A DNA stretch of 63,959 nucleotides, filler included, from Octopus bimaculoides (GCF_001194135.2; 8 parts of 8 records of this genome joined end to end with filler, not necessarily neighbours in it); one strand, 5' to 3'; shown: positions 35,151 to 52,457, counted from the whole stretch's first letter. Made by a program: numbers and translations. Notes: generated from the letters alone by a model not told the origin.

Positions 35151-35425
35151 NNNNNNNNNNNNNNNNNNNNNNNNNNNNNNNNNNNNNNNNNNNNTTAATT
35201 AATTAANNNNNNNNNNNNNNNNNNNNNNNNNNNNNNNNNNNNNNNNNNNNATATATATATATATATATACTAGAGTTGATGTGGGTGCACTAAGCTGCCT
35301 CGTTTGAAAATATAAGGATGCAGTTAGTGCGTTGCTAGCCAGCTGGAGAAGACGTTTTCCTGGGGTTAAATAGCAGTAACATTTGTCATAACCGGGACTG
35401 CCACATTACATTGGCAAATAAACTT

Positions 35426-35468
<43 letters not shown>

Positions 35469-36867
35469 ACACACAAAAACCTAAAACTTCCATTCTCTGT
35501 TTGTCTCTCTCTTTCTCTCTCGCACACACTCACGCTAGTTGAACTCAATCCAATCTATGTAACATTCACTCTATGCTGAATAGTGGTACAGTATGGGCAG
35601 ATTTTTGAAATCCAACGAACCTTTATACAAATATACCTCTTCAAAGAGATGTGATAAACCTATTATAATGGGTAATATTACGTGTACTTTTCCTTTGTGA
35701 TGTAATCTTTGGACTAACAATGTTTGCAGCTGAGGAGAGCTTTACACCATCTTTTCTATCAATAATATACCTATGCTGATGGGATAACAGATTGTTTATA
35801 AAGCTTGAAACACGTGTACTGCGATATCCTTTGTGTTCTCTTTTTAATTTATGTTTGATATATTCTCTCACCTCTGCCACTATCTGGCATATACAGGTGC
35901 TTACACTTATCAAGTATTCCCTCTAAACTTACAGTACTTACGTGTATATATATATATATATATATATATCACTGCTTCACAACTGCTGTTCGTTTATTTA
36001 CTTCCACATAAGTTACTGGTTTGGTGTATTCGCTTTTCACGCGAAAACGGCTTCACCAATTGCTTCCATACTTGTGATGCATGAATAATTTGACCTCGGA
36101 CATATTTTAGGAGTCCNNNNNNNNNNNNNNNNNNNNNNNNNNNNNNNNNNNNNNNNNNNNNNNNNNNNNNNNNNNNNNNNNNNNNNNNNNNNNNNNNNNN
36201 NNNNNNNNNNNNNNNNNNNNNNNNNNNNNNNNNNNNNNNNNNNNNNNNNNNNNNNNNNNNNNNNNNNNNNNNNNNNNNNNNNNNNNNNNNNNNNNNNNNN
36301 NNNNNNNNNNNNNNNNNNNNNNNNNNNNNNNNNNNNNNNNNNNNNNNNNNNNNNNNNNNNNNNNNNNNNNNNNNNNNNNNNNNNNNNNNNNNNNNNNNNN
36401 NNNNNNNNNNNNNNNNNNNNNNNNNNNNNNNNNNNNNNNNNNNNNNNNNNNNNNNNNNNNNNNNNNNNNNNNNNNNNNNNNNNNNNNNNNNNNNNNNNNN
36501 NNNNNNNNNNNNNNNNNNNNNNNNNNNNNNNNNNNNNNNNNNNNNNNNNNNNNNNNNNNNNNNNNNNNNNNNNNNNNNNNNNNNNNNNNNNNNNNNNNNN
36601 NNNNNNNNNNNNNNNNNNNNNNNNNNNNNNNNNNNNNNNNNNNNNNNNNNNNNNNNNNNNNNNNNNNNNNNNNNNNNNNNNNNNNNNNNNNNNNNNNNNN
36701 NNNNNNNNNNNNNNNNNNNNNNNNNNNNNNNNNNNNNNNNNNNNNNNNNNNNNNNNNNNNNNNNNNNNNNNNNNNNNNNNNNNNNNNNNNNNNNNNNNNN
36801 NNNNNNNNNNNNNNNNNNNTGGTAGAAAAATTTCTTTAATTTTCCTACCCTGTATAATTATAAATAA

Positions 36868-36938
<71 letters not shown>

Positions 36939-37395
36939 TTCTTCTATTTTTTACTTGTTTCAGTCATTTGACTGTAGCCATGCTGGAGCGCATACATACA
37001 TACATACATACATACATANNNNNNNNNNATATATATATATATATATACATACAATGTTTCCATCTAACAAATCCACTCATAAGGTTGGCCTGAGGCTATA
37101 GTAGAGGAAGACGCCTGTTCAAAGTTCTACGCAGTGGGACTGAACCCGGAACCATGTGTCAGAAAGCAGACTTCATACCACACAACCACTCCTGCGCCTA
37201 TATATAGATGAATAAAGATAGATATAGCCAGTCTATGGCGTTACCCTGGGTTTCATGTTTATAAAGTGCTTAGATTTACAGTATTTCCTCAGACCTTTAA
37301 CCCATTGACCTACAGCCTCTCTAGACTGGCCATATCTATCTTAATCTAAATACTCTACTGCTCTATAACTTAAGATTGTGCCTAATATATATATA

Positions 37396-37689
37396 TTTGA
37401 AGATAAGCAACAAAAATTCAATAGGTTATAGCAGTACGTAAGTTTCGTACAAGCTCCATTTATTCATGTAGTGAGAACACCACAGAATGTACAATGAAAA
37501 TGTACTCCTCAGCTGCATAATGGAATTTCATTTTAGAAAGTCATTTTGAAGATGTTTGCAAAAAACAAGAGTAAGAGAAGAAAACATACCATCTCGACTA
37601 TGCTGATGTTCCACTACATGAATAAATGGAGCTTGTACGAAACGTACATACTGCTATAACCTATTGAATTTTTGTTGCTTAACTTCAAA
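37396..37689. mobile_element. Foldback element with ~82-bp inverted arms
   Basis: 37396-37478 is the near-perfect reverse complement of 37608-37689. Confidence 0.8.
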
Positions 37690-38696
37690 TTTTATTCACC
37701 AAATCTCTTGATTTTGTTTTTGGTTTTTATCCTACCAAATTCTGGNNNNNNNNNNNNNNNNNNNNNNNNNNNNNNNNNNNNNNNNNNNNNNNNNNNNNNN
37801 NNNNNNNNNNNNNNNNNNNNNNNNNNNNNNNNNNNNNNNNNNNNNNNNNNNNNNNNNNNNNNNNNNNNNNNNNNNNNNNNNNNNNNNNNNNNNNNNNNNN
37901 NNNNNNNNNNNNNNNNNNNNNNNNNNNNNNNNNNNNNNNNNNNNNNNNNNNNNNNNNNNNNNNNNNNNNNNNNNNNNNNNNNNNNNNNNNNNNNNNNNNN
38001 NNNNNNNNNNNNNNNNNNNNNNNNNNNNNNNNNNNNNNNNNNNNNNNNNNNNNNNNNNNNNNNNNNNNNNNNNNNNNNNNNNNNNNNNNNNNNNNNNNNN
38101 NNNNNNNNNNNNNNNNNNNNNNNNNNNNNNNNNNNNNNNNNNNNNNNNNNNNNNNNNNNNNNNNNNNNNNNNNNNNNNNNNNNNNNNNNNNNNNNNNNNN
38201 NNNNNNNNNNNNNNNNNNNNNNNNNNNNNNNNNNNNNNNNNNNNNNNNNNNNNNNNNNNNNNNNNNNNNNNNNNNNNNNNNNNNNNNNNNNNNNNNNNNN
38301 NNNNNNNNNNNNNNNNNNNNNNNNNNNNNNNNNNNNNNNNNNNNNNNNNNNNNNNNNNNNNNNNNNNNNNNNNNNNNNNNNNNNNNNNNNNNNNNNNNNN
38401 NNNNNNNNNNNNNNNNNNNNNNNNNNNNNNNNNNNNNNNNNNNNNNNNNNNNNNNNNNNNNNNNNNNNNNNNNNNNNNNNNNNNNNNNNNNNNNNNNNNN
38501 NNNNNNNNNNNNNNNNNNNNNNNNNNNNNNNNNNNNNNNNNNNNNNNNNNNNNNNNNNNNNNNNNNNNNNNNNNNNNNNNNNNNNNNNNNNNNNNNNNNN
38601 NNNNNNNNNNNNNNNNNNNNNNNNNNNNNNNNNNNNNNNNNNNNNNNNNNNNNNNNNNNNNNNNNNNNNNNNNNNNNNNNNNNNNNNNNNNNNNNN

Positions 38697-38985
38697 GGGG
38701 GGGGCTATATCTTGGAAATCCGCCGGCCCGGTGGTTTCCCTTAATGGCAGAATTAATAGTCGAGACTATTCAAGCATTTTATCTGATCAAATTCATCCTA
38801 TGGTTACGGAACTGTTTCCGGAGGGAAACGCAATCTTTCAGGATGATAATGCACCAATTCACATAGCCAAAGTTGTTACTGAATAGCGCAAAGAACATTC
38901 TAGTGAAGTTGAACATCTTATCTGGCCACCACAGTCCCCAGATCTCAATATTATTGAACATTTATGGTACATTTTAGAAAAAGTT
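38697..38985 (+). mobile_element. Tc1-like DD34E transposase fragment
   Basis: GAISWKSAGPVVSLNGRIN...IFQDDNAPIH...LIWPPQSPDLNIIEHLW. One internal stop; the 5' part is in a gap. Confidence 0.85.
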
Positions 38986-39134
38986 TGAGGCCTTGCGCTT
39001 CCAGTAGAAAAGATTTATTGAAGTTGAAAAAGCGTGACACACTGACATTCAGATTTATTATATTAGATATGTTTAATTTTGGGGAAACTTTATTTCAGTT
39101 CAAGTGAATTTTATATATATATGTGTGTATGTGT

Positions 39135-39233
<99 letters not shown>

Positions 39234-40479
39234 TATATATATGTATTAAAGAAAGCAAAAAATAAAACAAGAATGATAAAAGCAAAAGGTTGAATGTGTG
39301 TAAAAGAGCTCAGTATGTTGGCCACATAAATTTCTGTCAAAGAGATACAGTATTAAACAAAGTTGTATATCATCTCCCTTTCTCTCTTATTATTACTCCT
39401 ACTGCCACCATCAGCACTATAACTTTTAATAAAGCATCATCAACTCTCCCTAAATTTCTTTATCTCTCTTTGTCTCCCTTTCTTTTTATTTTTTTCTCTC
39501 TATCTGACTTCGCCACCACCCTCACCCTATGCCTACTATTACTCTCACCCCAGCACAAGGAATAGTAGAAGTGTCATTAAATAGGGAGAGCCTATTTGGA
39601 GAAACTTTAATTAGAATATATGAATTTTTCTCAAAGTTATGGGGAAAGAAAATCGTTGGGACATATACGTATAGGTATGATGCGGTTAACGTTCCGATTC
39701 GTTATTGTATTGCATTGCGCATGCATTACTGGAGGTCCATAGTAAATAAGTATTTTCTTAAAAATTATAATCGTAGATATCATTCACCCACGGCAGTTGC
39801 TGGATATATTTTTAAGGTCAACTTTTAGGTAGTCGGGAGCACTTCTAGGTTTCATCACAATTCCAGTTCTCAACCAAATTGAATGCGGTGTCTTTTAGGA
39901 ATGATGGCCCAGTCTTCAGATATGCTTTGAAATCAGATAACTGAAAATTGATTCATTAAAAAAAGTTTAGGTCAAAAAATGGGAGAGTGAAGTAAAACTT
40001 CGAATTTCAATCAAAATACCTCAGTTATTTTAAAAGAAAATTATAGACTATATAGATATAGACTATAGATAGGAGATAATAACAATTCAAAGTAATTAAC
40101 TGTGAAAAAAAGCTTTTGTGCGTTCCCGGAGAATATTACCCTCAGCAGCGCTAGTGTTGGTATATTCGTGAATAAGTCACTAACCGAAATAAGTGGATCT
40201 ATTGTTTAGGAGAATACTATTTACTTGTTTAAGCGTTGTATTGGATAAATTGAGAAAATAACTAAAATAGTTCAAATACCAAGAAATAAGCATACTGAAA
40301 ACGAATGGGTTATTTCCCTTGGTGGTTATTTCCAGGAGGGAATGGTTTATTTCCCTTGGAAGCTTAAACATTTTACTCTCACCTAAATGTTATTCCTCCT
40401 GCCGTTTACCCTAACATTTTTTCGAAATCAATTTATATTTAAAACCTCCCCAAATACATAAGCAATGTGCGTGTGAAGT

Positions 40480-40566
40480 TTAAGAAAAATCGGTCGAGCC
40501 GTTTTGGTGCAAAACGAGAACATACCGATACACACAGACAGACATTTTCAGTTTTAATATGTAAGA

Positions 40567-40629
<63 letters not shown>

Positions 40630-40630
40630 A
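40480..40630 (+). mobile_element. Possible end of a Helitron/HINE-like non-autonomous element
   Basis: AAAATCGGTCGAGCCGTTTT...ACAGACAGAC...TTTTAATATGTAAGAT followed by (CTAT)n, similar to microsatellite-associated helitron-like ends. Similarity recalled, not searched. Confidence 0.3.
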
Positions 40631-40959
40631 TGTATATGATTGTTAAAGAAGACAACCAACGTTAAGGCAAGGCAAACATCTCAACTTGTATACAATATTA
40701 TTATTGGAAAACATTTAAAGTCTTACAGCTGTTTCTGGGATATCCCCGAGTATGGGATATTCCGTCATCAGAGACAAATAGGGAAATGGGGGGAAAAGGA
40801 GGAAAAAAGAGAATGGTACGTATTAATGAGATGACTATACAGAAGAAGTGGTGAAAGAAATAAGTAGATGGAGAGGGAGGAGAGAAAAGAGAAAAGGCAT
40901 AAAAGTTTATAATTTAGTATCATGATGCTGCAGAAACAAGACCTTGAGTCCTTAGGTGG

Positions 40960-41368
40960 TGTCCTGAGTATATCCATGAGTGTAAATCCTTGGATACAAT
41001 CTGGTGTAGATTCATGTGGGTTAACATCTTGATATCATAAGTTTTTCGCCCAGAACAACATAGCGTCGCTTCCACACTCGCATTATTCGCCACATTTAGT
41101 CCCTGGGGAATCCATCTCCTCAAGATGAAAATGCATCTCAAAGGCCGTTTTGAGAACGTTGTTTTGAAATCCAGAGCGAATCGCAGAAAGTCCTCGACTC
41201 GCTTACGGAAAACGACTTTCTGGCCGGATTCCCAAAATAGTAGGAACGCTGAGATGGGTGTATTGCTGCACAAGGTGACTATTTCGAAGGAGACGAGGCT
41301 AAAACTAAGGTGAATAAGTTATTTTTTATTAAACATATCTTGTTCGGGAACCTTTTGACCACCTCGTA
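40960..41368 (+). mobile_element. Mariner 3' fragment with right TIR
   Basis: FFAQNNIASLPHSHYSPHL (a PYSPDLAP homologue) and CIAAQGDYFEG. Ends GGAACCTTTTGACCACCTCGTA. Confidence 0.75.
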
Positions 41369-41813
41369 TGATACGCACAGAAATCGTTTTAAATGTACAA
41401 AAGGCAACGTAATAAATTACAAAATAATTATTAGGTTTCCGAGGTCACCATGCTTTCACTAGACAGAAAGGAGAAATTGAAGAAATAATTAGAAGTAATA
41501 ATCCTACCTGTATCTTCAGGAATGGCTTCTGAAAACTTATTTTCCGATATTTCGGGAATTCTCTCATCAAGTTTAGCAACTGGTCTTTTGGTCCTAACGA
41601 AATATAGAAATATTTCATTAATTACTAGTGATTCTATGATTGTATGATTGTCTGACTAAGACAAAAATGTTAATTATTATAGTGTTACAAGTACTAGTAG
41701 TATTAATATTGATACACCTCAAATAAATTTATATGAATAAATTATAATAATTAAAAGTAAACAACAAAGTCTTCAATTTCATACGGCAAACCATTTGTGT
41801 GACACACTGTTTA

Positions 41814-42691
41814 TATCAGGTCATCCCATAAGTTCTGTCCGAATTTTGAATAAAGAAAACAAGTGATCAAATGTTATATTTAATTGAAATTTAATCATCA
41901 ATGTTCTTTCCCTGATTATCTATGACTTCCTTCCATCTATTTACAAGCTTTTTAATCCCATCAATGTAAAACTCTTTTGGTTTCAAAACGAAGAATTCTG
42001 AAATGTCAGTTCCGACCTCCTCTTGGCTTGCGAAAGTTATGCCCCACAAATCATTCTGTAAACTACAAAACAAATGGTAGTCTGAAGGAGCAAGGTCGGG
42101 AGAATAAGGTGGATGTGGAATTTTTTCCCAACCAAGCTCTTCAATCTTCTGTGATGTGATCNNNNNNNNNNNNNNNNNNNNNNNNNNNNNNNNNNNNNNN
42201 NNNNNNNNNNNNNNNNNNNNNNNNNNNNNNNNNNNNNNNNNNNNNNNNNNNNNNNNNNNNNNNNNNNNNNNNNNNNNNNNNNNNNNNNNNNNNNNNNNNN
42301 NNNNNNNNNNNNNNNNNNNNNNNNNNNNNNNNNNNNNNNNNNNNNNNNNNNNNNNNNNNNNNGTTCAAACGCTCTAATTGCTGACAGTAGACTTGAGCAT
42401 TGATTGTTGCATTAGGTGGTAACAATTCAAAGTGAATTACTCCTTTGCAATTACACCAGATAGAGAGAAGAAACTTTTTTCCATGAAGTTCCCTTCTCGG
42501 TTGTGACTGAGTTTTTCCCCTTTTACCAAGTCACTCTTTACGACGTTAAACATTTCGATAGAAGATCCATTTTTCATCACCAGTCACAAGTCTATCCAAA
42601 AAGGGTGAAATGAGTTTGCGAGAATGGAGAGAAGAGCAGACGTCTACTCGGGATTTGTGGTTGCTTTCGGACAATTCATGAGGCACCCATT
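41814..42691 (-). mobile_element. Mariner transposon, 5' part lost in a gap
   Basis: TA followed by TIR TATCAGGTCATCCCATAAGTTCTGTCCG. Motifs WVPHEL, LVTGDEKWIFY, LPPNATINAQVYCQQLERL and GIKKLVNRWKEVIDNQG. Confidence 0.9.
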
Positions 42692-44162
42692 NNNNNNNNN
42701 NNNNNNNNNNNNNNNNNNNNNNNNNNNNNNNNNNNNNNNNNNNNNNNNNNNNNNNNNNNNNNNNNNNNNNNNNNNNNNNNNNNNNNNNNNNNNNNNNNNN
42801 NNNNNNNNNNNNNNNNNNNNNNNNNNNNNNNNNNNNNNNNNNNNNNNNNNNNNNNNNNNNNNNNNNNNNNNNNNNNNNNNNNNNNNNNNNNNNNNNNNNN
42901 NNNNNNNNNNNNNNNNNNNNNNNNNNNNNNNNNNNNNNNNNNNNNNNNNNNNNNNNNNNNNNNNNNNNNNNNNNNNNNNNNNNNNNNNNNNNNNNNNNNN
43001 NNNNNNNNNNNNNNNNNNNNNNNNNNNNNNNNNNNNNNNNNNNNNNNNNNNNNNNNNNNNNNNNNNNNNNNNNNNNNNNNNNNNNNNNNNNNNNNNNNNN
43101 NNNNNNNNNNNNNNNNNNNNNNNNNNNNNNNNNNNNNNNNNNNNNNNNNNNNNNNNNNNNNNNNNNNNNNNNNNNNNNNNNNNNNNNNNNNNNNNNNNNN
43201 NNNNNNNNNNNNNNNNNNNNNNNNNNNNNNNNNNNNNNNNNNNNNNNNNNNNNNNNNNNNNNNNNNNNNNNNNNNNNNNNNNNNNNNNNNNNNNNNNNNN
43301 NNNNNNNNNNNNNNNNNNNNNNNNNNNNNNNNNNNNNNNNNNNNNNNNNNNNNNNNNNNNNNNNNNNNNNNNNNNNNNNNNNNNNNNNNNNNNNNNNNNN
43401 NNNNNNNNNNNNNNNNNNNNNNNNNNNNNNNNNNNNNNNNNNNNNNNNNNNNNNNNNNNNNNNNNNNNNNNNNNNNNNNNNNNNNNNNNNNNNNNNNNNN
43501 NNNNNNNNNNNNNNNNNNNNNNNNNNNNNNNNNNNNNNNNNNNNNNNNNNNNNNNNNNNNNNNNNNNNNNNNNNNNNNNNNNNNNNNNNNNNNNNNNNNN
43601 NNNNNNNNNNNNNNNNNNNNNNNNNNNNNNNNNNNNNNNNATATATACACACACACACACACACACATGCCATGTCAGGTTTATATTACGGTGCCAACGT
43701 CACAAACCAATATTATTAGCAATATTGGCCATGATATTAAGGCGAAAAGCTGGCGGGGTCTTTAGAACACTGGGCAAAATGTTTAACTGCAGGTTTTCAG
43801 TTTTGTGTCGCAAATATTTGTGTTGAAATATCGCACAAACACAGTTTGTTTTCATCGTATTAAAATATTTTATTTTAAAAAAAATATGTTTACGTCAAAT
43901 TGCACATTCTACTGTTAAAATTATTACTACGAATATTAATTCAGAATTTAATATAATAAAAGGGCGATTTGTGCAATTAATATTATCATAAAGAGGAATA
44001 CCAAATTAATATACCCCGTAGTTGAGGGAAAATATTGAATATTTATATGGATCAGATTGTGTGTCCTTACTATCTAGTAAGGACACTAATCCAAAATTTA
44101 GTGTTCATTCAACCACATTAATTACATTTAAGATTAAAATAATACAAAAACCCAATACATAC

Positions 44163-44253
44163 CAACGCGAAATTGCAGCCGCGATTCCCACGTTTAAGAT
44201 AGCAAACAGGATCAATGGAACTAGCATAAACACCAGGATATACTTTGTTTCTT
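44163..44253 (-). CDS. Transmembrane exon of the FTP-EGF gene
   Basis: Acceptor ctccaatttccag, donor cgttg|gtatgt. 91 nt, phase 1-2: ETKYILVFMLVPLILFAILNVGIAAAISR, with a ~22-aa hydrophobic helix. In frame with the EGF exon. Confidence 0.8.
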
Positions 44254-44300
44254 CTGGAAATTGGAGAAGTGTATTGTTTATATACGTTCATACGGACATC

Positions 44301-44348
<48 letters not shown>

Positions 44349-45782
44349 TAAACAGTCATATATGTATCATACATGATATACATACCTCACGAGAACGATT
44401 TTATTGTGGTATATGTCATATGGATGTGAGTTGTTTAGAAAGAGAATGATTTTTAAAATAACCATTTTTCTGGAAGTTATGAAGAAACAGAGTCGATGGG
44501 GTACACTTGTATATATATGCACATTGAGTTAACATAAGTCATGCTATAATTATGTTGCTACTATATATCTACATATCAGTTTGCTTCACTTCACTTTCAT
44601 TTTGTATGTAACAATATTTAATTATGTAACTGCATGTTATATATAAACAAAATATATATTTCTTTCATTCCGTTAGCGTCAAAAGAGTGACAATAATTTG
44701 AATGAGATGGGCTCAATTTTTCACTACACATAAACGAAAATAGGATATAATAGTATGTACGATGACACTGTGTAACGACTACTAACTATATCAAAAATCC
44801 ATCGTATTATGTGTGTGTGTGCGTGCGCGTGCGTGTGTGTGTGTATGTGCCTTATACAATTTATTGGCTGTAATCAGAAAGTTTTCATTGCTTTGTAGAC
44901 GCACGTTCCCTTAACTTAATTACATTTCACCTGGTATCTTTACAAATTCTATTATTGATGTTTGAGCTTCATTCATGTATTTCCTGCATTCTCCCTATGT
45001 GCGTGCCATTTGTAAATGTACGATTATACACTATAGAATATATGATACAATATCAAACCAATGTAAGACACATTTTTATGTATTTTGCCTTTAGTCCTGT
45101 TTTTTTCTTGTGTATGTGCATATATAGACGTGTGTATGAACCTTTCGAGACGGCAACGTTGTTCCATGGATGTAAGTNNNNNNNNNNNNNNNNNNNNNNN
45201 NNNNNNNNNNNNNNNNNNNNNNNNNNNNNNNNNNNNNNNNNNNNNNNNNNNNNNNNNNNNNNNNNNNNNNNNNNNNNNNNNNNNNNNNNNNNNNNNNNNN
45301 NNNNNNNNNNNNNNNNNNNNNNNNNNNNNNNNNNNNNNNNNNNNNNNNNNNNNNNNNNNNNNNNNNNNNNNNNNNNNNNNNNNNNNNNNNNNNNNNNNNN
45401 NNNNNNNNNNNNNNNNNNNNNNNNNNNNNNNNNNNNNNNNNNNNNNNNNNNNNNNNNNNNNNNNNNNNNNNNNNNNNNNNNNNNNNNNNNNNNNNNNNNN
45501 NNNNNNNNNNNNNNNNNNNNNNNNNNNNNNNNNNNNNNNNNNNNNNNNNNNNNNNNNNNNNNNNNNNNNNNNNNNNNNNNNNNNNNNNNNNNNNNNNNNN
45601 NNNNNNNNNNNNNNNNNNNNNNNNNNNNNNNNNNNNNNNNNNNNNNNNNNNNNNNNNNNNNNNNNNNNNNNNNNNNNNNNNNNNNNNNNNNNNNNNNNNN
45701 NNNNNNNNNNNNNNNNNNNNNNNNNNNNNNNNNNNNNNNNNNNNNNNNNNNNNNNNNNNNNNNNNNNNNNNNNNNNNNNNNN

Positions 45783-45824
<42 letters not shown>

Positions 45825-46238
45825 GACGGGCTTCATTCAGTTTCCGCCTACCAAATCCACTCTCAAGGCTTTGGTCAGCCCGAGGCTATAGTAGAAGACA
45901 CTTGCCCAAGGTGCCACGCAGTGGGACTGAACCCGGAACCATGTGGTACTTTCACATAAAAACAATAATAAAATTAATATCTCATTTATAACAGTGGAAT
46001 TAATGAGAGAGATTAAGTTCTGTTGAAATTCTTGTTTTCAAGAGAAAAATAACGTTTAGACTTTCCCCCAAAATTTTTTAATAATGCTTATGACAAATTA
46101 AATAGGGTTGGTAATGGTAATATCCCTAAATTATTGTGGATATGGATATGTGTAGTAACTGATGTAAAAAAAGATTTGCAAGAAAATCTAATAATCGCTC
46201 AGTAAGAGATTGAGTAAGAGATTAGTAGTTTATCTTAC

Positions 46239-46382
46239 CTTTGCATCTCTTGGAATTATTGTTCCAGTCATATCCCGTGATGCAACCTTTCTCACAATGT
46301 CCCGTGACTTGATCACATTTAGAACCTACACACAATTCACAACGTTTCATACACATATCTCCATAGAATCCAGGAACACATT
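46239..46382 (-). CDS. Exon encoding a laminin-type/SREC-MEGF10-like EGF repeat
   Basis: Poly-T tract plus tatcgcag acceptor, donor aaag|gtaaga. 144 nt, phase 1-1, 8 Cys: CVPGFYGDMCMKRCELCVGSKCDQVTGHCEKGCITGYDWNNNSKRCK. Confidence 0.9.
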
Positions 46383-46569
46383 CTGCGATAACAAAAATGA
46401 AAAAAAAAAAAAAGAATATTATGGTAACTGTATGTATTTCACTAACGTTAGTTGTAATAATATTTTATAGAATGGTTACGGTTTAAATTTGCGCTATTAA
46501 CTCATTGATGGCTACCATTCTTATAAATCAGTATTTTTTCAAGTGAAATAATAGATATACATAACTTAC

Positions 46570-46752
46570 GTAATACTTCCACTTCACAAAGAGTAAGCAT
46601 TCTCTCATCTCCTTCTAACGATATTTTGACATTACTTGAATTTACTGGGTTTTGACATTTAATATAGATTACTTGTTCCTCGTTTTCATTATTCATACTT
46701 TCAAAACAAAGTGATGATCCAAGGTAAACTTTAAATCCTTTCAGACTTTTAT
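46570..46752 (-). CDS. Exon encoding the C-terminal half of the F-type lectin domain
   Basis: Acceptor ttttgattctag, donor ttac|gtaagt. 183 nt, phase 1-1: KSLKGFKVYLGSSLCFESMNNENEEQVIYIKCQNPVNSSNVKISLEGDERMLTLCEVEVL. Ends in the FTP signature LTLCEVEV. Confidence 0.9.
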
Positions 46753-46879
46753 CTAGAATCAAAATATAAGAGTAAAAACTGAAATCAGATGTTAGCTACA
46801 TTGAGAATAATTTCGAAAGAAAAATAATTTCAAAAGATCACCAAGGCATGGGTCTCCCTTTCTTACAATTTGTCTAATT

Positions 46880-47365
46880 AAATAATTAGACGAGTTAGAT
46901 TGATTGACCAGAGGGTGGCATTATTTCTTCTCGGTGAGTCACCTTCCTTTTTGTTTAGGGAAATATTCCTCCGCAAGTTACCACCCGAGGTCCAGGCCCA
47001 CATAACTCAGACCCAGATCAAGTACCTGCGGTAGTTAGCGAAATCAGCTGACAAACATTTTTCATCCGGTGGGGGTTATGGTCAACGTCATAGTATCAGC
47101 CACGAGACATGGTAGAGTTAAGGAAGATGACCTGTGCTTCTACTACACAAAGTACAGGGAAAAGGCTACCAGGTGTAAACAACCATGTTGCTTCAAGATC
47201 CCTTGGCCATCGGCCCCGGGAAACTTCAGGGCCGGCCGCCATTGAATACTCTGTTGGTCAGCAAACACGATCAACTGCTCCTGTATGTCCATGATCTGAG
47301 CTTTTGACGTAGGTAAGTTCCTAATCGACAAAGGAGCAGAAGTCTGCATAATCCCAACATCGGCA
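46880..47365 (+). mobile_element. Gypsy LTR retrotransposon gag-protease fragment, intronic
   Basis: SPSFLFREIFLRKLPPEVQAHI, CFYYTKYREKATRCKQPCCF, a GNFRAGRH* gag end, and an aspartic protease-like FLIDKGAEVCIIP. Confidence 0.75.
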
Positions 47366-47385
47366 AGGGACCCTCGTTACGGAAA

Positions 47386-47472
47386 ACCACTTGCACGTTA
47401 ATTTCACGAGCAGGCTGTTTCGTTGATCGGATCAACTGGAACCCTCGACGTCGTAAGCGACGGAGTGCCAAT
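47386..47472 (+). mobile_element. SINE family A 3' fragment
   Basis: CCACTTGCACGTTAATTTCACGAGCAGGCTG...GACGGAGTGCCA. Confidence 0.85.
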
Positions 47473-47533
47473 AATAAACAATTGGAAACTTAGTAATAGC
47501 AATAACGAAAGTAGTAGTTTTAGCAATACTTAC

Positions 47534-47791
47534 GCTCTTTCATTCGATTGTATATTCTCAGTTGTGATATCACGTATGGTTTATCAAACATCACTTGCCA
47601 GTATGGATCGGTTTCAAATGTAGTTTGTGCACATGATTTATGTGGAAATGCATGGTCAAAATTACCGTCAACCGCCTTGTCGGATGTCATATTTAGTTCC
47701 ATGATTTTACATGTTCCATTGTAGAAAACGTCTGTTCCTAACTCTCTATAATTACTTGTTTGATTTGTTTGTTTACCTTGAGCAATATTAA
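47534..47791 (-). CDS. Exon encoding the N-terminal half of an F-type lectin (FTP/F5_F8-like) domain
   Basis: Acceptor ttttttcag, donor gagc|gtaagt. 258 nt, phase 1-1: NIAQGKQTNQTSNYRELGTDVFYNGTCKIMELNMTSDKAVDGNFDHAFPHKSCAQTTFETDPYWQVMFDKPYVISQLRIYNRMKE. Has the FTP hallmarks NIA.GK.T.QTS, AVDGN, C..T...PYW.V and IYNR. Confidence 0.9.
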
Positions 47792-49199
47792 CTGAAAAAA
47801 GATCGACGCCTGAATTAATATTCAGTACAAAGCTTTTAGTTCAGTATATTTAGAAAGTGTATTTTGTGAATCCATGATACATATCTATAGATCCAGTTTT
47901 CTGTACACAATAACATAAATGCAGTGTATACCTTAACATATACTAAGTCTGTATCGCCCAAAAGTATCAAATTGGAAACGGCAGTTATAACACAAAAACT
48001 TAACATTTATAAAAGAAATATACATAAAAAAACCTGTCAAGAATATCAAAAAAGTTATAATTACATCTTGTATAATTTCCTTCAATTCTACAAAAGGCTG
48101 AATTTTTAGCGCTAAATCATTTTACATTGCATACTAAAGAATTTTTAAAATTTTGATGTAAAATATTATCTGGGGAAATTTAATAAATATAAAATTATAT
48201 AGGTACAATTTCTTCTCAAAAAAATAATTCGTTAACGAAACCTTTTGATAGAATTATAATAACTTGCTTTAATCCCAACTTCAATTAGACGTATGAGAAC
48301 AACATTAGCATTATGATACAACAATATACTTCACCGATGATACAATAATCGAAATCTGAAAACTAGAAAGACTATCATCTAGGAATATGAAATGTAATAT
48401 ATTATGTAAGTAGAATGAGAAAAATACATCTCCAATGCATAAGTAATAATTAATTAATTGTATAGACTTTAGTATATACTACTGGTATGACACCCACTGG
48501 AAGGGTGAAAATTCAAAGTTAGTTTGGCTGAGTGGTGGAAATGAACTTGCAATAAGGAAAAGGACGACGTAAATAAATACTACTCTTCTGTTTCAGCTAT
48601 TCTTTCAACGATTAATATTTGTGATTCTTTTACAACTTCCATCCCTATATCGGATATGAGGGTTCTTCCTACGTTACACATTGATATATGTAAAGAAAAC
48701 ATGAAGCCCAATTCCACTTCCATTCACTGGTTTTCCAAGTAACATATATGAGAAAACTAAACACTATAAGATAATAAATCATTAATAAGTCATTAATAAG
48801 TTAATAAATCATTATATATATATAATATATACACGACGGGCTTCTCTCAGTTTCCGCCTACCAAATTCACTCACAAGGCTTTGGTCGGCCTGAGACTATA
48901 GCAGACGGCACTTGCCCGAGGTACCACTCGGTGGAACTGAACCCGGAATCATATGGTTGGGAAGCAAACTTCTTACAACACAGCCACTCCTGTGCCTATC
49001 TCTCTTATTTTGATTCCTTCAATTCCTGAATTGTTGATTCACAGTTCTTTAATTTATAGCAATGTGTCAGTCCACTTCCACTTTTCATCCTTCCACAACA
49101 AGTTGTACCGGTGCGTAATTTTCCCTCAACTCAGAAAACAAGAAATCCAACAGAAAAAATAAACTCAACAGCCCCAGGATAAACCTTTCCAGCATCTCA

Positions 49200-50030
49200 G
49201 GAAACCGAAGGACATCCTGTAGCAATAAAAATAAAACAAACAACCGACAAAACCGTCACTGTAACCACAACTTCAGCCACCAAATATTCCTTAACCAGAC
49301 AAATTATTCTTTTTTATCCATGGGGAACCTAGCAAAAGAATTTCAGAAAACTGCCATGGCTGTCACACTGTGCTCGTGGATCCACAGAACTTTCTGAACT
49401 AGAGATGCTCCTAATATTATCCTTCGCTTCTCTACGATCGTCCGTCCTCACACAGAATAATGTTATGCGTTCTGGTCGCTCTACACGAAAGTAACTATAA
49501 AAATTAAAGCACCCCAGAGATCAATCAAAGAAAAAGCAAGGTTTTGACTTCTGAGATCGGATCGCGAAGCTCAAGCTTTATTCCCTCCAACGCTGCCATG
49601 GATGCTATATCATTTGTATAATATGGAAAATATTCCAACATTGTCCAACTTCAAAATTCACTCTAGACTTGGTCCCAATGCCATCTGTCCTCTTCAAAAA
49701 TTGCCCTCGTCTCACATTACAACACTGAGACAGAACTATTTTGCTTCAACTGGCCCTCTGCAAATAACTCTTTGCACGCATGGGCGATGGTGCCCAAAGC
49801 ACGATTAAATGTCTTTATAGGTGCTGCTTTTAAGTTAGTCATGGCCTGGGTAAATTCTGGCCGAAATCTATCTAAGCATCTCCATACCCTGAACATATAT
49901 GTACTCACAGTATGTTGGCTTGTCACACTTCTCTCCATGCCATCCATCTTCGCAGCCATTTTTACAGAATCCATTTATTTGGTGACATGATTCCCCTCGA
50001 GAACAATGACATTCATTGGTACAGTCTTCT
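49200..50030 (+). mobile_element. CR1/Jockey-group LINE 3' fragment
   Basis: Fragments read WIHRTF*TRD, IVRPH, KLKLYSLQRCHGCYIICIIWKIF and QNYFASTGP, matching the RT C-terminal motifs LVRPHLEY and LYSL.RRR.. Confidence 0.7.
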
Positions 50031-50180
50031 CCATACAATTCTGGTGGACATCCTAAATTGGTAATATCGAGAGAGTTTCTTTCTAAATGAACATTAAAAT
50101 AAAACAGTCATTGAATACAAAATTCAACAACCTTCCACAATCTCACTAATCAGGTAACTTATCAATAAAAGATGATATTT

Positions 50181-51482
50181 ATTATATTTCATGTCATCTC
50201 ATGAGAAATGTCGGAGTTTTGGGGAGGAAAAAAGTGATCTAACTTTACATTTTATTAAAATTTAATCCTGGATATAATACCAATCATTATCGATATTTCT
50301 CTTCCATCTATCCATCAGCCTTTTAAAATTCCATTGGTAAAGATATCTTTTGGTTTTGGTGAGAAGGAAAAGAGGTTCGGTTTCGACCTCTTTGAGGCTT
50401 TTGAGTACTAATCCATCTAAACGATTCTGTAAGCTTCGAAATTGATGGTAATCAGAAGGGGTGAGGTCCGGCAAATAAAGCAGGTGAGTGATTTTCTCCC
50501 ACCCAAGTTCTTCGATTTTCTTCAGATGTAATCTTTGCAGTGTGAGGCCTTGAATTATCATCTTGAAACACCACTGCATTACCATTCACTAAAGCAGGCC
50601 TTTATTCAAAGCATGCAGGTGCTTTAATTCTTGGCAATAGGTGTGAGCAGTAATTGTTGCATTAGTTGGTGGTACCTCAAAGTGGAAAATTTTCACCAAA
50701 CAGAAAGAAGAATCTTTTTTTACTCGGAAGTCCTTTTAGATTGTGGTTTAACCTGTTCTTAACAGCTAAGCCATTCCCTGCATCGCTTACCGTTTTCTTT
50801 AAAAAATCCATTTTTAATCACCAGTCACTAATCTGTCCCAAAGTGGTGAAATACGCTCATGAGAGTGAAGAGACGAGCAGATGTCCACTCGTGATTTTTG
50901 GTTGATTTCTGTCAACTCATGGGGAACCTATTTTCCGAGTTTCGGCTCCTATCCAAGTCGTTGAAGATGGCGGCGAACAGTTGAAGAATTGGCAAGCAAG
51001 CTCAGCTTGCTTGCTAATTCTTCAACTGACACAGCATTATACTTCTCAAGCTCTAGCAACAGATGTTCATCGACAAAGCCAAATTCAACAGGGCGTCCCA
51101 TTCGCGGCCTCTCTCTTTGGCTGATTTTTGAAAATTGTTAACCAACTTCTGTAACTTCTTTCGTTCAAGCACTCTTCTCCACAAGCAGAATGGATATTTT
51201 GGATATTTTGTGTTACTTCTGCTGCACTGTTTCCCTTTTTGAACACATATAACATTATGTGCCTTAAACACTCCTTCGATCCGTCCATCTTTGAGCGGTT
51301 AATATTAGTAATTAATTCAATCAGATTATTCTATAAAAAGAAATTATATTAAGTTAAAGATTTCCAAATTCATATGTGTCTCAATCAATACATTTGACAT
51401 TTCAGAATACTGTAAAATTTGATAGAAATTACATATATGATATTTCGGACATTATTTTTGGGATGTCGTGATATATAATATA
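50181..51482 (-). mobile_element. Full-length decayed mariner transposon
   Basis: Imperfect TIRs at ~50181-50216 and ~51444-51482. N-terminus MDGSKECLRHIMLYVFKKGNSAAEV; C-terminus EELGWEKITHLLYLPDLTPSDYHQFRSLQN and MDRWKRNIDNDWYY. Multiple frameshifts. Confidence 0.9.
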
Positions 51483-51954
51483 TGCGTGTGTGTGTCTGTA
51501 TACAAATACATGTATATATATATATATATAATTGACGATTCCCTGCCCTGCATATCTATATATATATATGGGAGTATTTACGAAAAAAAACAACAGACGA
51601 AGACAGGTGGTGTAAACAACAAGTGGATGTATTAGTTTAATGCTCGGGAATAGAGAAAGTCTTTGACGTTTCGAGCTATGCTCTTCAACTGAAAGTAACA
51701 CGGAAAGAAACAAGGAGAAACAAATATATAAATGTAGTGGTCAGCGATCTATCATGGCGAATGAAGTAAAAAAATGTATTTACACAAATATTTGTGATCT
51801 ATAGAATTTATTTTGTATTAAAATGCATCCTTTTATTATTTGTATATTTATACTTATATATTTATCCAATATTTATCTTGTATTACAAATAATTTCAAAC
51901 CGCAAAATATTAATTCAATATGAAGTCGTTTAGATGAGTATTAAGGGATCTGGC

Positions 51955-52047
51955 GAAAAGTTGCTTTGTTGAAAAGTTGCTTCGATGAAAAATTGCTTCG
52001 AAGAGAAGTTGCGAGGTGAATTATTGTTTGATAAAAGGTTTTGCTAT
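51955..52047. repeat. Short 15-16-bp tandem repeat GAAAAGTTGCTTCGAT, 5-6 decaying units
   Basis: Units start at 51955, 51971, 51987, 52003 and 52018. Confidence 0.75.
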
Positions 52048-52114
52048 CAATGATTGCACTTAACATTTAGAAAAGCATTTAACAATCGTTTTATAAAGCG
52101 AGACATCAACATAC

Positions 52115-52258
52115 CAATTAATTTAATATGATAAACTTCGGCTATGCCATCGATATACAGTTTATCAGCCGTGGCATCACCAGTGCAAATTAACCTTCTT
52201 GCACTTGGTCGTAGCTTGCATTCTATTCCACTTGGATAGGTAACTTTCATTGTTGAAT
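52115..52258 (-). CDS. Exon of the FTP-EGF-TM gene; resembles the C-terminal half of a degenerate FTP-like beta-sandwich
   Basis: Strong acceptor (ttttctgtatgtactcttctcaacag) and donor (attg|gtatgt). 144 nt, phase 1-1, open: xSTMKVTYPSGIECKLRPSARRLICTGDATADKLYIDGIAEVYHIKLI. Splices in frame to 47791 (G|TT=V, giving VNIAQGK). Confidence 0.65.
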
Positions 52259-52457
52259 CTGTTGAGAAGAGTACATACAGAAAAATAGAAAATTTATGTC
52301 TGTAAATATTAAGNNNNNNNNNNNNNNNNNNNNNNNNNNNNNNNNNNNNNNNNNNNNTTAATTAATTAANNNNNNNNNNNNNNNNNNNNNNNNNNNNNNN
52401 NNNNNNNNNNNNNGAGAGAGAGAGAAGGAGAAAGAGGGAGAGAGAGAGAGGGGGGGA

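What the first reader, a model, noticed from the sequence alone, without database searches (positions are those of the whole stretch)
44163..52258. Hidden multi-exon F-type lectin / EGF / transmembrane receptor gene
Five exons have canonical GT-AG sites and matching phases (1-1, 1-1, 1-1, 1-1, 1-2). They splice into one stop-free ORF: degenerate FTP-like half-domain, complete FTP domain, 8-Cys laminin/SREC-type EGF, then a TM helix. The exons are seen directly in the sequence. FTP+EGF+TM architectures are known to be expanded in molluscs and are mostly uncharacterised. A role as an immune or sensory cell-surface receptor is inference. The signal-peptide exon and cytoplasmic tail were not found.
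Basis: partly seen in the sequence, partly recalled or inferred. Interest (0 to 1): 0.7.

Follow-up and report, generated by a model that had tools for sequence, protein, structure and literature searches.

The report
Annotated octopus lectin-like membrane receptor gene
The exons are real, but they belong to an Octopus bimaculoides gene already in public annotation (LOC106883470), an ordinary member, without the enzyme part, of a large mollusc family of lectin-like/EGF receptor tyrosine phosphatases.

Summary
The gene is not hidden. The spliced product is 100% identical to O. bimaculoides XP_014789979.1 / UniProt A0A0L8FHF4 (LOC106883470).

- a sixth 144-nt exon (EGF1, 50052-49909) between the half-domain and the FTP domain;
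- a juxtamembrane tail exon (41593-41508);
- a terminal exon (39940-39933, Val-Ile-stop).

The signal peptide, a Cys-rich module and the first half of domain 1 lie beyond the piece's edge.

The assembly gap sits inside intron E-F. Both flanks are colinear with one O. sinensis intron that holds no extra exon.

The FTP domain is a true F-type lectin fold, but it keeps only one residue of the fucose-binding His/Arg/Arg triad (Q/R/S). The EGFs are SREC-type.

Close paralogues carry a tyrosine-phosphatase domain after the TM helix. This gene and its O. sinensis orthologue end after about 30 cytoplasmic residues.

The ORF, all splice sites and 23/23 cysteines are conserved, although dN/dS is 0.77 and the exons diverge faster than the introns.

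Most likely it is a functional, non-catalytic cell-surface binding protein. Novelty is low.

The parts
52115..52258 (-). Exon A (144 nt, phase 1-1). It encodes the C-terminal half of 'domain 1', a short degenerate galactose-binding-like jelly roll. The first half of that domain, the Cys-rich module and the signal peptide lie beyond the piece's edge.
   Evidence: Splice sites. 100% match to P0001. Orthologous exon at L001 34782-34925 with AG/GT. Domain model at pLDDT 93. hhalign P=0.0065.
49909..50052 (-). An alternative acceptor at 50082 adds 10 residues (isoform X1).
   Evidence: (P0013).
47534..47791 (-). Exon C (258 nt, phase 1-1): N-terminal part of the F-type lectin (FTP) domain.
46570..46752 (-). 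Exon D (183 nt, phase 1-1): C-terminal part of the FTP domain.
46239..46382 (-). Exon E (144 nt, phase 1-1): 8-Cys EGF2. The exon is 97% identical, and its flanks 94% identical, to an extra EGF exon of the in-species paralogue L002.
45178..45782 (.). Assembly gap (N) inside intron E-F. It is bordered by (CA)n and a SINE-like repeat, and no exon is expected in it.
44163..44253 (-). Exon F (91 nt, phase 1-2): transmembrane helix, followed by basic residues (type I orientation).
41508..41593 (-). Exon G (86 nt, phase 2-1): juxtamembrane cytoplasmic tail (W)TKRPVAKLDERIPEISENKFSEAIPEDT. It is homologous to the juxtamembrane segment of the phosphatase-bearing paralogues.
39933..39940 (-). Coding start of terminal exon H: TTATCTGA, which reads (V) I stop. 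The acceptor and the sequence are conserved in O. sinensis (L001 61436-61443). The 3' UTR follows.
50262..51330 (-). Mos1/mariner transposase remnant inside intron A-B. It is not part of the gene product.
   Evidence: HTH_48, E=3.1e-10. Also present at the orthologous site in O. sinensis.

Best explanation
Shown. The piece holds the 3' two-thirds (eight coding exons, minus strand) of the already annotated Octopus bimaculoides gene LOC106883470. It encodes a type I membrane protein. The order is: [signal peptide, Cys-rich module and first half of domain 1, all off the piece], second half of a degenerate jelly-roll domain, SREC-type EGF, F-type-lectin-fold domain, SREC-type EGF, TM helix, and a cytoplasmic tail of about 30 residues with no tyrosine.

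The gene belongs to a mollusc-wide family whose typical members continue after the same juxtamembrane segment into a protein-tyrosine-phosphatase domain. This gene and its O. sinensis orthologue stop instead. No PTP exon is found in the readable part of the piece or within 10 kb downstream of the orthologue's stop. The reading frame, all splice sites and all 23 cysteines are maintained between species. The lectin domain has lost two of the three fucose-binding residues; the orthologue has lost all three.

Inferred. The protein is a functional, non-catalytic cell-surface binding or adhesion molecule. Its ectodomain probably binds a ligand other than fucose through the variable loops of the jelly rolls. 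Having no enzymatic or tyrosine-motif tail, it would act through a partner, or as a decoy or competitor for the ligands of its phosphatase-bearing paralogues. Its fast, loop-centred divergence and its sequence exchange with paralogues fit a young, lineage-specific recognition family.
For: - Identity and annotation.
- Exon structure.
- Orthologous colinear locus with all AG/GT sites kept.
- Maintenance of the ORF. 23/23 Cys are kept (P=8e-4). No stop has arisen (P about 0.005 in a neutral simulation). Only in-frame indels occur, against about 7.5 indels expected at the intron rate (P about 0.007). All.
- F-type fold.
- Triad Q/R/S: with the triad defined in PMC5712786.
- SREC-type EGF.
- TM helix and tail.
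- Phosphatase in paralogues, including HCSAGVGRTG.
- Family spread across Mollusca. 2166 cluster representatives at E<=0.001.
- No PTP exons here or within 10 kb downstream in O. sinensis.
Against: - No transcript or protein evidence could be examined here.
- dN/dS is 0.77, not significantly below 1 (Z=1.17), so constraint on most residues is weak.
- No protein at least 90% identical from the newer O. bimaculoides annotation appeared, and no gene call with this product is on record. The locus may have been dropped, changed or not assembled there.
- The 5' exons are off the piece, so the intactness of the whole gene in this species is unverified.
- The O. vulgaris model (P0018) ends differently, so the C-terminus is model-dependent.
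- The decoy/co-receptor mechanism is inference only.
Confidence: 0.6

Rival explanations
1. It is a decaying or unprocessed pseudogene, a relic copy of a receptor-phosphatase paralogue that lost its catalytic exons and now drifts neutrally.
For: dN/dS is 0.77 and not significantly below 1. Exons diverge at least as fast as introns. The fucose triad is lost. There is no matching protein in the newer annotation.
Against: Eight exons are open. All 28 splice-site bases and 23/23 Cys are conserved with O. sinensis. The only indels are in frame. The neutral simulation gives P(no stop) about 0.005 and P(all Cys kept) about 0.0005. The intron indel rate predicts about 7.5 indels in the CDS. The short-tail terminal exon is conserved in two species.
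Confidence: 0.12
2. It is a full receptor-type tyrosine phosphatase. The PTP exons would lie further downstream, beyond the piece or in its gaps, and the short-tail models would be a minor or truncated isoform.
For: The closest paralogues are RPTPs with a homologous juxtamembrane exon. The piece has large N gaps downstream (36117-36819, 37746-38696). The O. vulgaris model has a different C-terminus.
Against: No PTP similarity (best E>2) appears in the readable 4.7 kb downstream in the window, or in the 10 kb downstream of the O. sinensis stop. In the paralogue L002 the next cytoplasmic exon follows about 1.5 kb after the juxtamembrane (tail) exon. The Val-Ile-stop exon and its acceptor are conserved in both species, and independent NCBI models use it in each.
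Confidence: 0.1
3. It is a canonical fucose-binding F-type lectin receptor that works as an immune pattern-recognition or chemosensory receptor.
For: The domain is a true F-type fold. Some paralogues keep H/R/R. The family is fast-evolving.
Against: His52 is Gln and Arg86 is Ser, and the Cys82-Cys83 pair is absent. The orthologue has also lost Arg79. The triad is what contacts fucose in AAA (PMC5712786). There are no expression data and no signalling motif in the tail.
Confidence: 0.08
4. The exons are chance open frames with fortuitous GT-AG sites.
For: None beyond the AT-rich context, in which short ORFs are common.
Against: The product is 100% identical to a database protein. There are strong Pfam and PDB matches. 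There is a conserved orthologous exon-intron structure.
Confidence: 0.01

Closest known systems
O. bimaculoides LOC106883470 (XP_014789979.1 / XP_014789978.1; UniProt A0A0L8FHF4 / A0A0L8FGS0)
   Same: It is the same gene. The 8-exon splice product from the window is 100% identical over the model's 349 aa. Isoform X1 uses the alternative acceptor at 50082.
   Different: The public models start at an internal Met in exon A. They do not include the upstream exons seen in the orthologue, which lie beyond the edge of this piece. No function has been studied, and no paper cites the identifiers.
O. sinensis 'protein draper-like' XP_029634479.1 (orthologue, locus L001)
   Same: The locus is colinear, including introns and a shared mariner insertion. 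Exon phases are identical. The protein is 74% identical and has the same short tail ending in Val-Ile-stop.
   Different: It is full length (signal peptide, Cys-rich module, whole domain 1). It has lost all three triad residues (Q/Q/S). There is a 3-nt indel in exon C, exon G is 6 nt shorter, and the introns are much larger.
Mollusc FTLD-EGF receptor-type tyrosine phosphatases (e.g. O. bimaculoides XP_052834032.1/UPI00071E5C53, O. sinensis 'RPTP T-like' P0019; Haliotis, Crassostrea, Biomphalaria 'RPTP epsilon/alpha/kappa-like')
   Same: They share the same ectodomain modules, TM helix and juxtamembrane exon. Identity to the nearest paralogue is 63-71%. Even intron sequence is alignable.
   Different: They continue into one or two PTP domains (PF00102, HCSAGVGRTG). 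The window gene does not.
F-type lectins (Anguilla AAA 1K12, Morone MsaFBP32 3CQO, Streptococcus lectinolysin/SpX modules)
   Same: They share the fold and sequence family (E=2.4e-20 to 3cqo; TMt 0.71-0.77).
   Different: The fucose-binding triad is H/R/R in those lectins and Q/R/S here. There is no Cys82-Cys83 pair. This protein is membrane-anchored and flanked by EGFs, not a soluble lectin.
Draper / MEGF10 / MEGF11 and SCARF1 (SREC-I)
   Same: They share the 8-Cys EGF repeat type. The family profile's best solved match is SCARF1. This is why NCBI names the models 'MEGF10' or 'draper-like'.
   Different: This protein has no EMI domain, only two EGFs, and no NPxY/YxxL tail motifs. The name reflects EGF similarity, not orthology.

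Membership tests
F-type lectin domain (FTLD / FTP; Pfam PF22633 F5_F8_type_C_2) | Profile match above the curated threshold and sequence similarity to solved F-type lectins | tested here: met
   PF22633 at 39.0 bits against a cut-off of 27.8, covering 1-91/91 of the profile. 3cqo E=2.4e-20 and 1k12 E=6e-7.
F-type lectin domain (FTLD / FTP; Pfam PF22633 F5_F8_type_C_2) | F-type jelly-roll fold | tested here: met
   The top 11 PDB matches of the AlphaFold model are all F-type lectin modules, with TMt 0.71-0.77 for the single-domain chains and 0.39 for two-domain 3cqo, and E 5e-8 to 4e-6. The domain core has pLDDT 84-92.
F-type lectin domain (FTLD / FTP; Pfam PF22633 F5_F8_type_C_2) | Fucose-binding basic triad His52 / Arg79 / Arg86 (AAA numbering) | tested here: not met
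   The alignment to 1k12 gives Gln / Arg / Ser. The O. sinensis and O. vulgaris orthologues have Gln / Gln / Ser. Some paralogues keep H/R/R. The triad is defined in PMC5712786.
F-type lectin domain (FTLD / FTP; Pfam PF22633 F5_F8_type_C_2) | Vicinal Cys82-Cys83 disulfide that stacks on fucose | tested here: not met
   The aligned positions are Glu and a gap, in 'NRMKE-HKS'.
F-type lectin domain (FTLD / FTP; Pfam PF22633 F5_F8_type_C_2) | Measured binding of L-fucose or fucosylated glycans | not testable with these tools
   This needs recombinant protein and a glycan array.
Receptor-type protein tyrosine phosphatase (mollusc FTLD-EGF subfamily) | Homologous ectodomain, TM helix and juxtamembrane segment | tested here: met
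   63-71% identity to P0002 over the ectodomain. Exon-by-exon correspondence with L002, including tail exon G.
Receptor-type protein tyrosine phosphatase (mollusc FTLD-EGF subfamily) | Cytoplasmic PTP catalytic domain (PF00102, HCX5R loop) | tested here: not met
   There is no PF00102 hit in P0001 or P0017. There is no PTP-like exon at E<2 in the readable piece or in the 10 kb after the O. sinensis stop. Caveat: N gaps and the piece's edge.
Draper / MEGF10 / MEGF11 | N-terminal EMI domain plus a long array of EGF repeats | tested here: not met
   The Pfam scan of the full-length orthologue P0017 shows no EMI. Only two 8-Cys EGFs are present.
Draper / MEGF10 / MEGF11 | Cytoplasmic NPxY and YxxL/ITAM-like motifs | tested here: not met
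   The tail WTKRPVAKLDERIPEISENKFSEAIPEDTVI has no tyrosine.
SREC/SCARF-type (8-Cys) EGF repeat | Eight cysteines in the pattern C-x8-C-x3-C-x-C-x5-C-x6-C-x3-C-x8..12-C, and a profile match to solved SREC EGFs | tested here: met
   The pattern is seen directly. The family profile matches SCARF1 (8hna) at E=6.6e-12 and Tie2 EGF at 3.6e-5. Pfam on the window's own single EGFs is only sub-threshold (PF24887, 18.4 bits against 27).
Galactose-binding-domain-like jelly roll (for 'domain 1', half of which is exon A) | Jelly-roll fold related to F5/8C / CBM32 / FTLD | tested here: inconclusive
   The model has pLDDT 93.4 and pTM 0.85. The best PDB matches are CBM32, fucosidase C-terminal and CBM6 modules, but only at E 0.05-0.5 and TMq 0.45-0.59. 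hhalign against FTP gives P=0.0065 and probability 5.8%. The intron position and phase are the same as in the FTP domain.

The most novel reading that the evidence does not exclude
This gene is a conserved, phosphatase-less and fucose-triad-less offshoot of a mollusc-wide family of receptor tyrosine phosphatases with F-type-lectin ectodomains. That family is little described in the literature. The gene's exons evolve faster than its introns and swap segments with paralogues. On this reading it is a rapidly diversifying decoy or co-receptor that tunes ligand access to catalytic RPTP paralogues, analogous to decoy receptors in vertebrate immunity.
Probability: 0.25. Interest if true: 0.45.

Novelty: already known. 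Interest (0 to 1): 0.15.

Why it matters
For the scan, this is a correct exon-level reading of a gene that public annotation already contains, so it adds no new gene.

The wider context is mildly useful. F-type-lectin-fold plus EGF ectodomains fused to tyrosine phosphatases are abundant across Mollusca, yet two recent F-type lectin reviews do not mention them. Octopods also keep phosphatase-less copies.

If such copies act as decoys or adhesion molecules, they would be a route to the unknown ligands of invertebrate RPTPs. Nothing here is surprising to a specialist in mollusc gene families.

Tried and rejected
- Pfam on single exon translations gave almost nothing: only FTP-N above threshold, EGF1 sub-threshold, and a spurious Bunya_G2 hit for EGF2. 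Family profiles and whole proteins were needed.
- An exact look-up of the window protein in assemblies found no record. I could not place the piece in the chromosome-level assembly or recover its 5' exons.
- The first BLAST against fetched loci mixed L001 and L002, because both sit in one file. I corrected this. The apparent 'upstream tandem copy in O. sinensis' was really the O. bimaculoides paralogue L002.
- The search for PTP exons downstream, relaxed to E<=10, gave only chance hits.
- Literature searches for the gene identifiers found nothing. Two further searches found no paper on FTLD-phosphatase receptors.
- I considered a C-terminal PDZ-ligand reading of '-DTVI'. I dropped it because the orthologue ends '-PEVI'.
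- I considered that the gap hides a second EGF exon, as in paralogue L002. I rejected this because the orthologous O. sinensis intron has none, although it cannot be excluded for O. bimaculoides itself.

Full report
**1. What is in the sequence**

The readable piece (35251-52313) has 35% G+C and is broken by six N runs. All the coding signal of the finding is on the minus strand.

- A, 52258-52115
- C, 47791-47534
- D, 46752-46570
- E, 46382-46239
- F, 44253-44163

Each has an AG acceptor behind a pyrimidine tract and a GTAAGT/GTATGT-type donor. Phases are 1-1 for the first four and 1-2 for F.

Between A and C lies a further 144-nt exon, B (50052-49909). It has acceptor ...ttag and donor gtgagt, and is also phase 1-1.

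**2. Identity**

The six-exon translation is 100% identical over 99% of its length to a 349-aa O. bimaculoides protein. An exact cluster look-up names it UniProt A0A0L8FHF4 / XP_014789979.1 ('multiple EGF-like domains protein 10'). A second isoform is A0A0L8FGS0 / XP_014789978.1 (LOC106883470 isoform X1).

Isoform X1 uses an acceptor 30 nt upstream of exon B, at 50082, which adds ERNSLDITNL. The gene is therefore already annotated, not hidden.

Exon G (41593-41508) encodes (W)TKRPVAKLDERIPEISENKFSEAIPEDT. A terminal exon starts at 39940 with TTATCTGA, which reads Val-Ile-stop.

The public models begin at an internal Met in exon A. The orthologue's upstream exons lie beyond the edge of this piece.

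**3. The gap**

The N run at 45178-45782 lies in intron E-F. The O. sinensis orthologue (XP_029634479.1, 'protein draper-like'; locus L001) is colinear with window 39615-52313 at 83-93% nucleotide identity, introns included.

The sequences on both sides of the gap match the same O. sinensis intron in the same order and orientation. That 3306-nt intron contains no N and no family exon. It holds microsatellites and SINE-like repeats, which explains why the assembly broke there.

The frame does not depend on the gap. A second EGF exon like the one in paralogue L002 cannot be strictly excluded for O. bimaculoides, but the orthologue gives no support for it.

**4. Is it a live gene?**

All eight orthologous exons in O. 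sinensis keep their AG/GT sites and the frame. The only length differences are a 3-nt indel in exon C and a 6-nt donor shift in exon G.

Protein identity is 74%. dN=0.139, dS=0.179 and dN/dS=0.77, which is not significantly below 1 (Z=1.17).

Against simple decay:
- 23 of 23 cysteines are kept (P=8e-4 if the 90 replacements fell at random).
- A neutral simulation at the observed divergence leaves the frame stop-free in only 0.5% of runs.
- The intron indel rate (7.1 per kb) predicts about 7.5 indels in the CDS (P about 0.007 for no frameshift).

So the scaffold of the protein is under selection while most surface positions are free or driven to change.

Oddly, the exons differ more than the introns do:
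- exons, 13.3%;
- aligned intron bases, 8.25% (Z=4.5);
- pN (0.127) against the intron rate, Z=3.6;
- 200-nt exon flanks, 9.8%.

Part of this is exchange among paralogues. Exon E is 97% identical, and about 300 nt of its flanks 94% identical, to an extra EGF exon of the in-species paralogue L002. The same exon and flanks are only 88-89% identical to the orthologue. Of 89 polarisable exon differences, 58 have the window agreeing with in-species paralogues.

I could not separate gene conversion, diversifying selection and CpG effects.

**5. Domains**

- **FTP domain.** The 148-aa domain (exons C and D) passes Pfam PF22633 (39 bits against 27.8). It matches solved F-type lectins by sequence (MsaFBP32 3cqo, E=2.4e-20; eel AAA 1k12, E=6e-7). 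In a model of the whole product (mean pLDDT 68, FTP core 84-92), the top 11 PDB fold matches are all F-type lectin modules.
- **Sugar site.** The fucose site is not conserved. In the alignment to AAA, His52/Arg79/Arg86 are Gln/Arg/Ser, and the Cys82-Cys83 pair is Glu/gap. The orthologues have Gln/Gln/Ser, while several paralogues keep His/Arg/Arg. The role of these residues is taken from PMC5712786.
- **EGF modules.** Both have eight cysteines. A family profile finds the SCARF1/SREC-I EGF repeats as the best solved match (E=6.6e-12).
- **Domain 1.** Exon A is the second half of a 98-aa module. The first half is off the piece. Modelled from ten family sequences, the module folds confidently (pLDDT 93.4) into a small beta sandwich. 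Its nearest solved relatives are CBM32, fucosidase C-terminal and CBM6 jelly rolls, though only at E 0.05-0.5. hhalign against the FTP alignment gives P=0.0065, in the expected register. The intron splits both domains at the same place and phase.
- **TM and tail.** Exon F gives a 19-residue hydropathy maximum of 2.81 and a modelled helix at residues 292-320. It is followed by R-W-T-K-R, which fits a type I orientation. The tail has no tyrosine and is modelled as disordered.

**6. Family context**

The nearest O. bimaculoides paralogue is XP_052834032.1 and older versions of it, at locus L002 on CM046630.1. It has the same exons, followed about 1.5 kb after the tail exon by further cytoplasmic exons that lead into a tyrosine-phosphatase domain with HCSAGVGRTG.

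A search with that protein shows PF22633 together with PF00102 in many annotated 'receptor-type tyrosine-protein phosphatase' models. They come from octopods, abalones, limpets, pulmonate snails, oysters, scallops, unionids and a chiton.

The exhaustive search finds 2166 cluster representatives related to the window protein at E<=0.001, and 68 at E<=1e-30.

The window gene and its orthologue lack the phosphatase. There is no PF00102 hit. There is no PTP-like exon in the readable downstream 4.7 kb or in the 10 kb beyond the O. sinensis stop.

The NCBI names 'MEGF10' and 'draper-like' only reflect EGF similarity. There is no EMI domain, no long EGF array and no NPxY/YxxL motif.

**7. Interpretation**

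Shown: this is an intact, conserved, already annotated type I membrane protein of the mollusc FTLD-EGF receptor family, without a catalytic tail and without the canonical fucose site.

Inferred: it is a non-catalytic cell-surface binding or adhesion protein that works through partners, or competes with its phosphatase-bearing paralogues for ligands.

Rivals:
- pseudogene, about 0.12;
- RPTP with undetected distal PTP exons, about 0.10;
- canonical fucose-binding immune lectin, about 0.08;
- chance, about 0.01.

No expression evidence could be examined. No paper mentions the gene. Two F-type lectin reviews do not mention phosphatase fusions.

**8. Verdict**

Novelty is 'already known'. Interest is low (0.15). 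A modest upside remains if the phosphatase-less copies prove to be decoy receptors.

Noticed in passing
window 50262-51330 (minus), intron A-B; L001 36327-37755: A Mos1/mariner transposase remnant lies in the intron (HTH_48, E=3.1e-10, plus frameshifted DDE-part ORFs). It sits at the orthologous place in O. sinensis at 82-91% identity, so the insertion predates the species split.
   Followed up: partly
window 42141-42691 (minus) and 38697-38886 (plus): Further mariner/Tc1-like transposase fragments abut assembly gaps, for example 'WVPHELSESNHKSRVDVCSSLHSRK...' and '...IFQDDNAPIHIAKVVTE'. Pfam gave no hit on the first of these short pieces; the second was not scanned.
   Followed up: partly
window 45783-45947, 48813-49027, 36991-37226: A SINE-like repeat of about 165-215 bp is present in three copies in the piece and about 19 copies in the 71-kb O. 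sinensis locus, at 70-95% identity. One copy borders the gap inside the finding.
   Followed up: no
window 43641-43675, 44290-44345, 45783-45815: (CA)n/(TG)n microsatellites border the N gaps. One lies about 35 nt upstream of the exon F acceptor. They probably caused the assembly breaks.
   Followed up: no
window 46044-46490 vs L002 16496-16952: A segment of about 450 bp carrying exon E is 97% (exon) and 94% (flanks) identical to an extra EGF exon of the in-species paralogue. The orthologue is 88-89% identical over the same segment. The O. sinensis counterpart of that paralogue (P0019) lacks this extra EGF. This points to recent inter-paralogue exchange or exon transfer.
   Followed up: partly
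window exons A-G vs L001: Exons diverge faster than introns between the two octopus species: 13.3% against 8.25% (local flanks 9.8%). Even the non-synonymous rate (0.127) exceeds the intron rate. The cause is unresolved: gene conversion, diversifying selection, CpG effects or alignment bias.
   Followed up: partly
L002 4092-7692 and 42704-54739: The NCBI model XP_052834032.1 of the paralogue starts at the exon-A equivalent. tblastn finds unannotated upstream exons (signal peptide, Cys-rich module, first half of domain 1). It also finds a second series of PTP-like exons downstream, either a D2 domain or another gene copy.
   Followed up: no
proteins (P0019-P0134): Receptor tyrosine phosphatases with an F-type-lectin-like (PF22633) ectodomain are annotated throughout Mollusca. 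Two recent F-type lectin reviews have no occurrence of 'phosphatase'. The architecture seems under-described.
   Followed up: partly
P0028 (Logan contig of 3255 nt): An intron-free 888-aa ORF from a sequencing-run assembly carries two complete tandem units: Cys-rich module, domain 1, EGF, FTP, EGF. It looks like a transcript of a related cephalopod gene. Its source organism was not identified.
   Followed up: no
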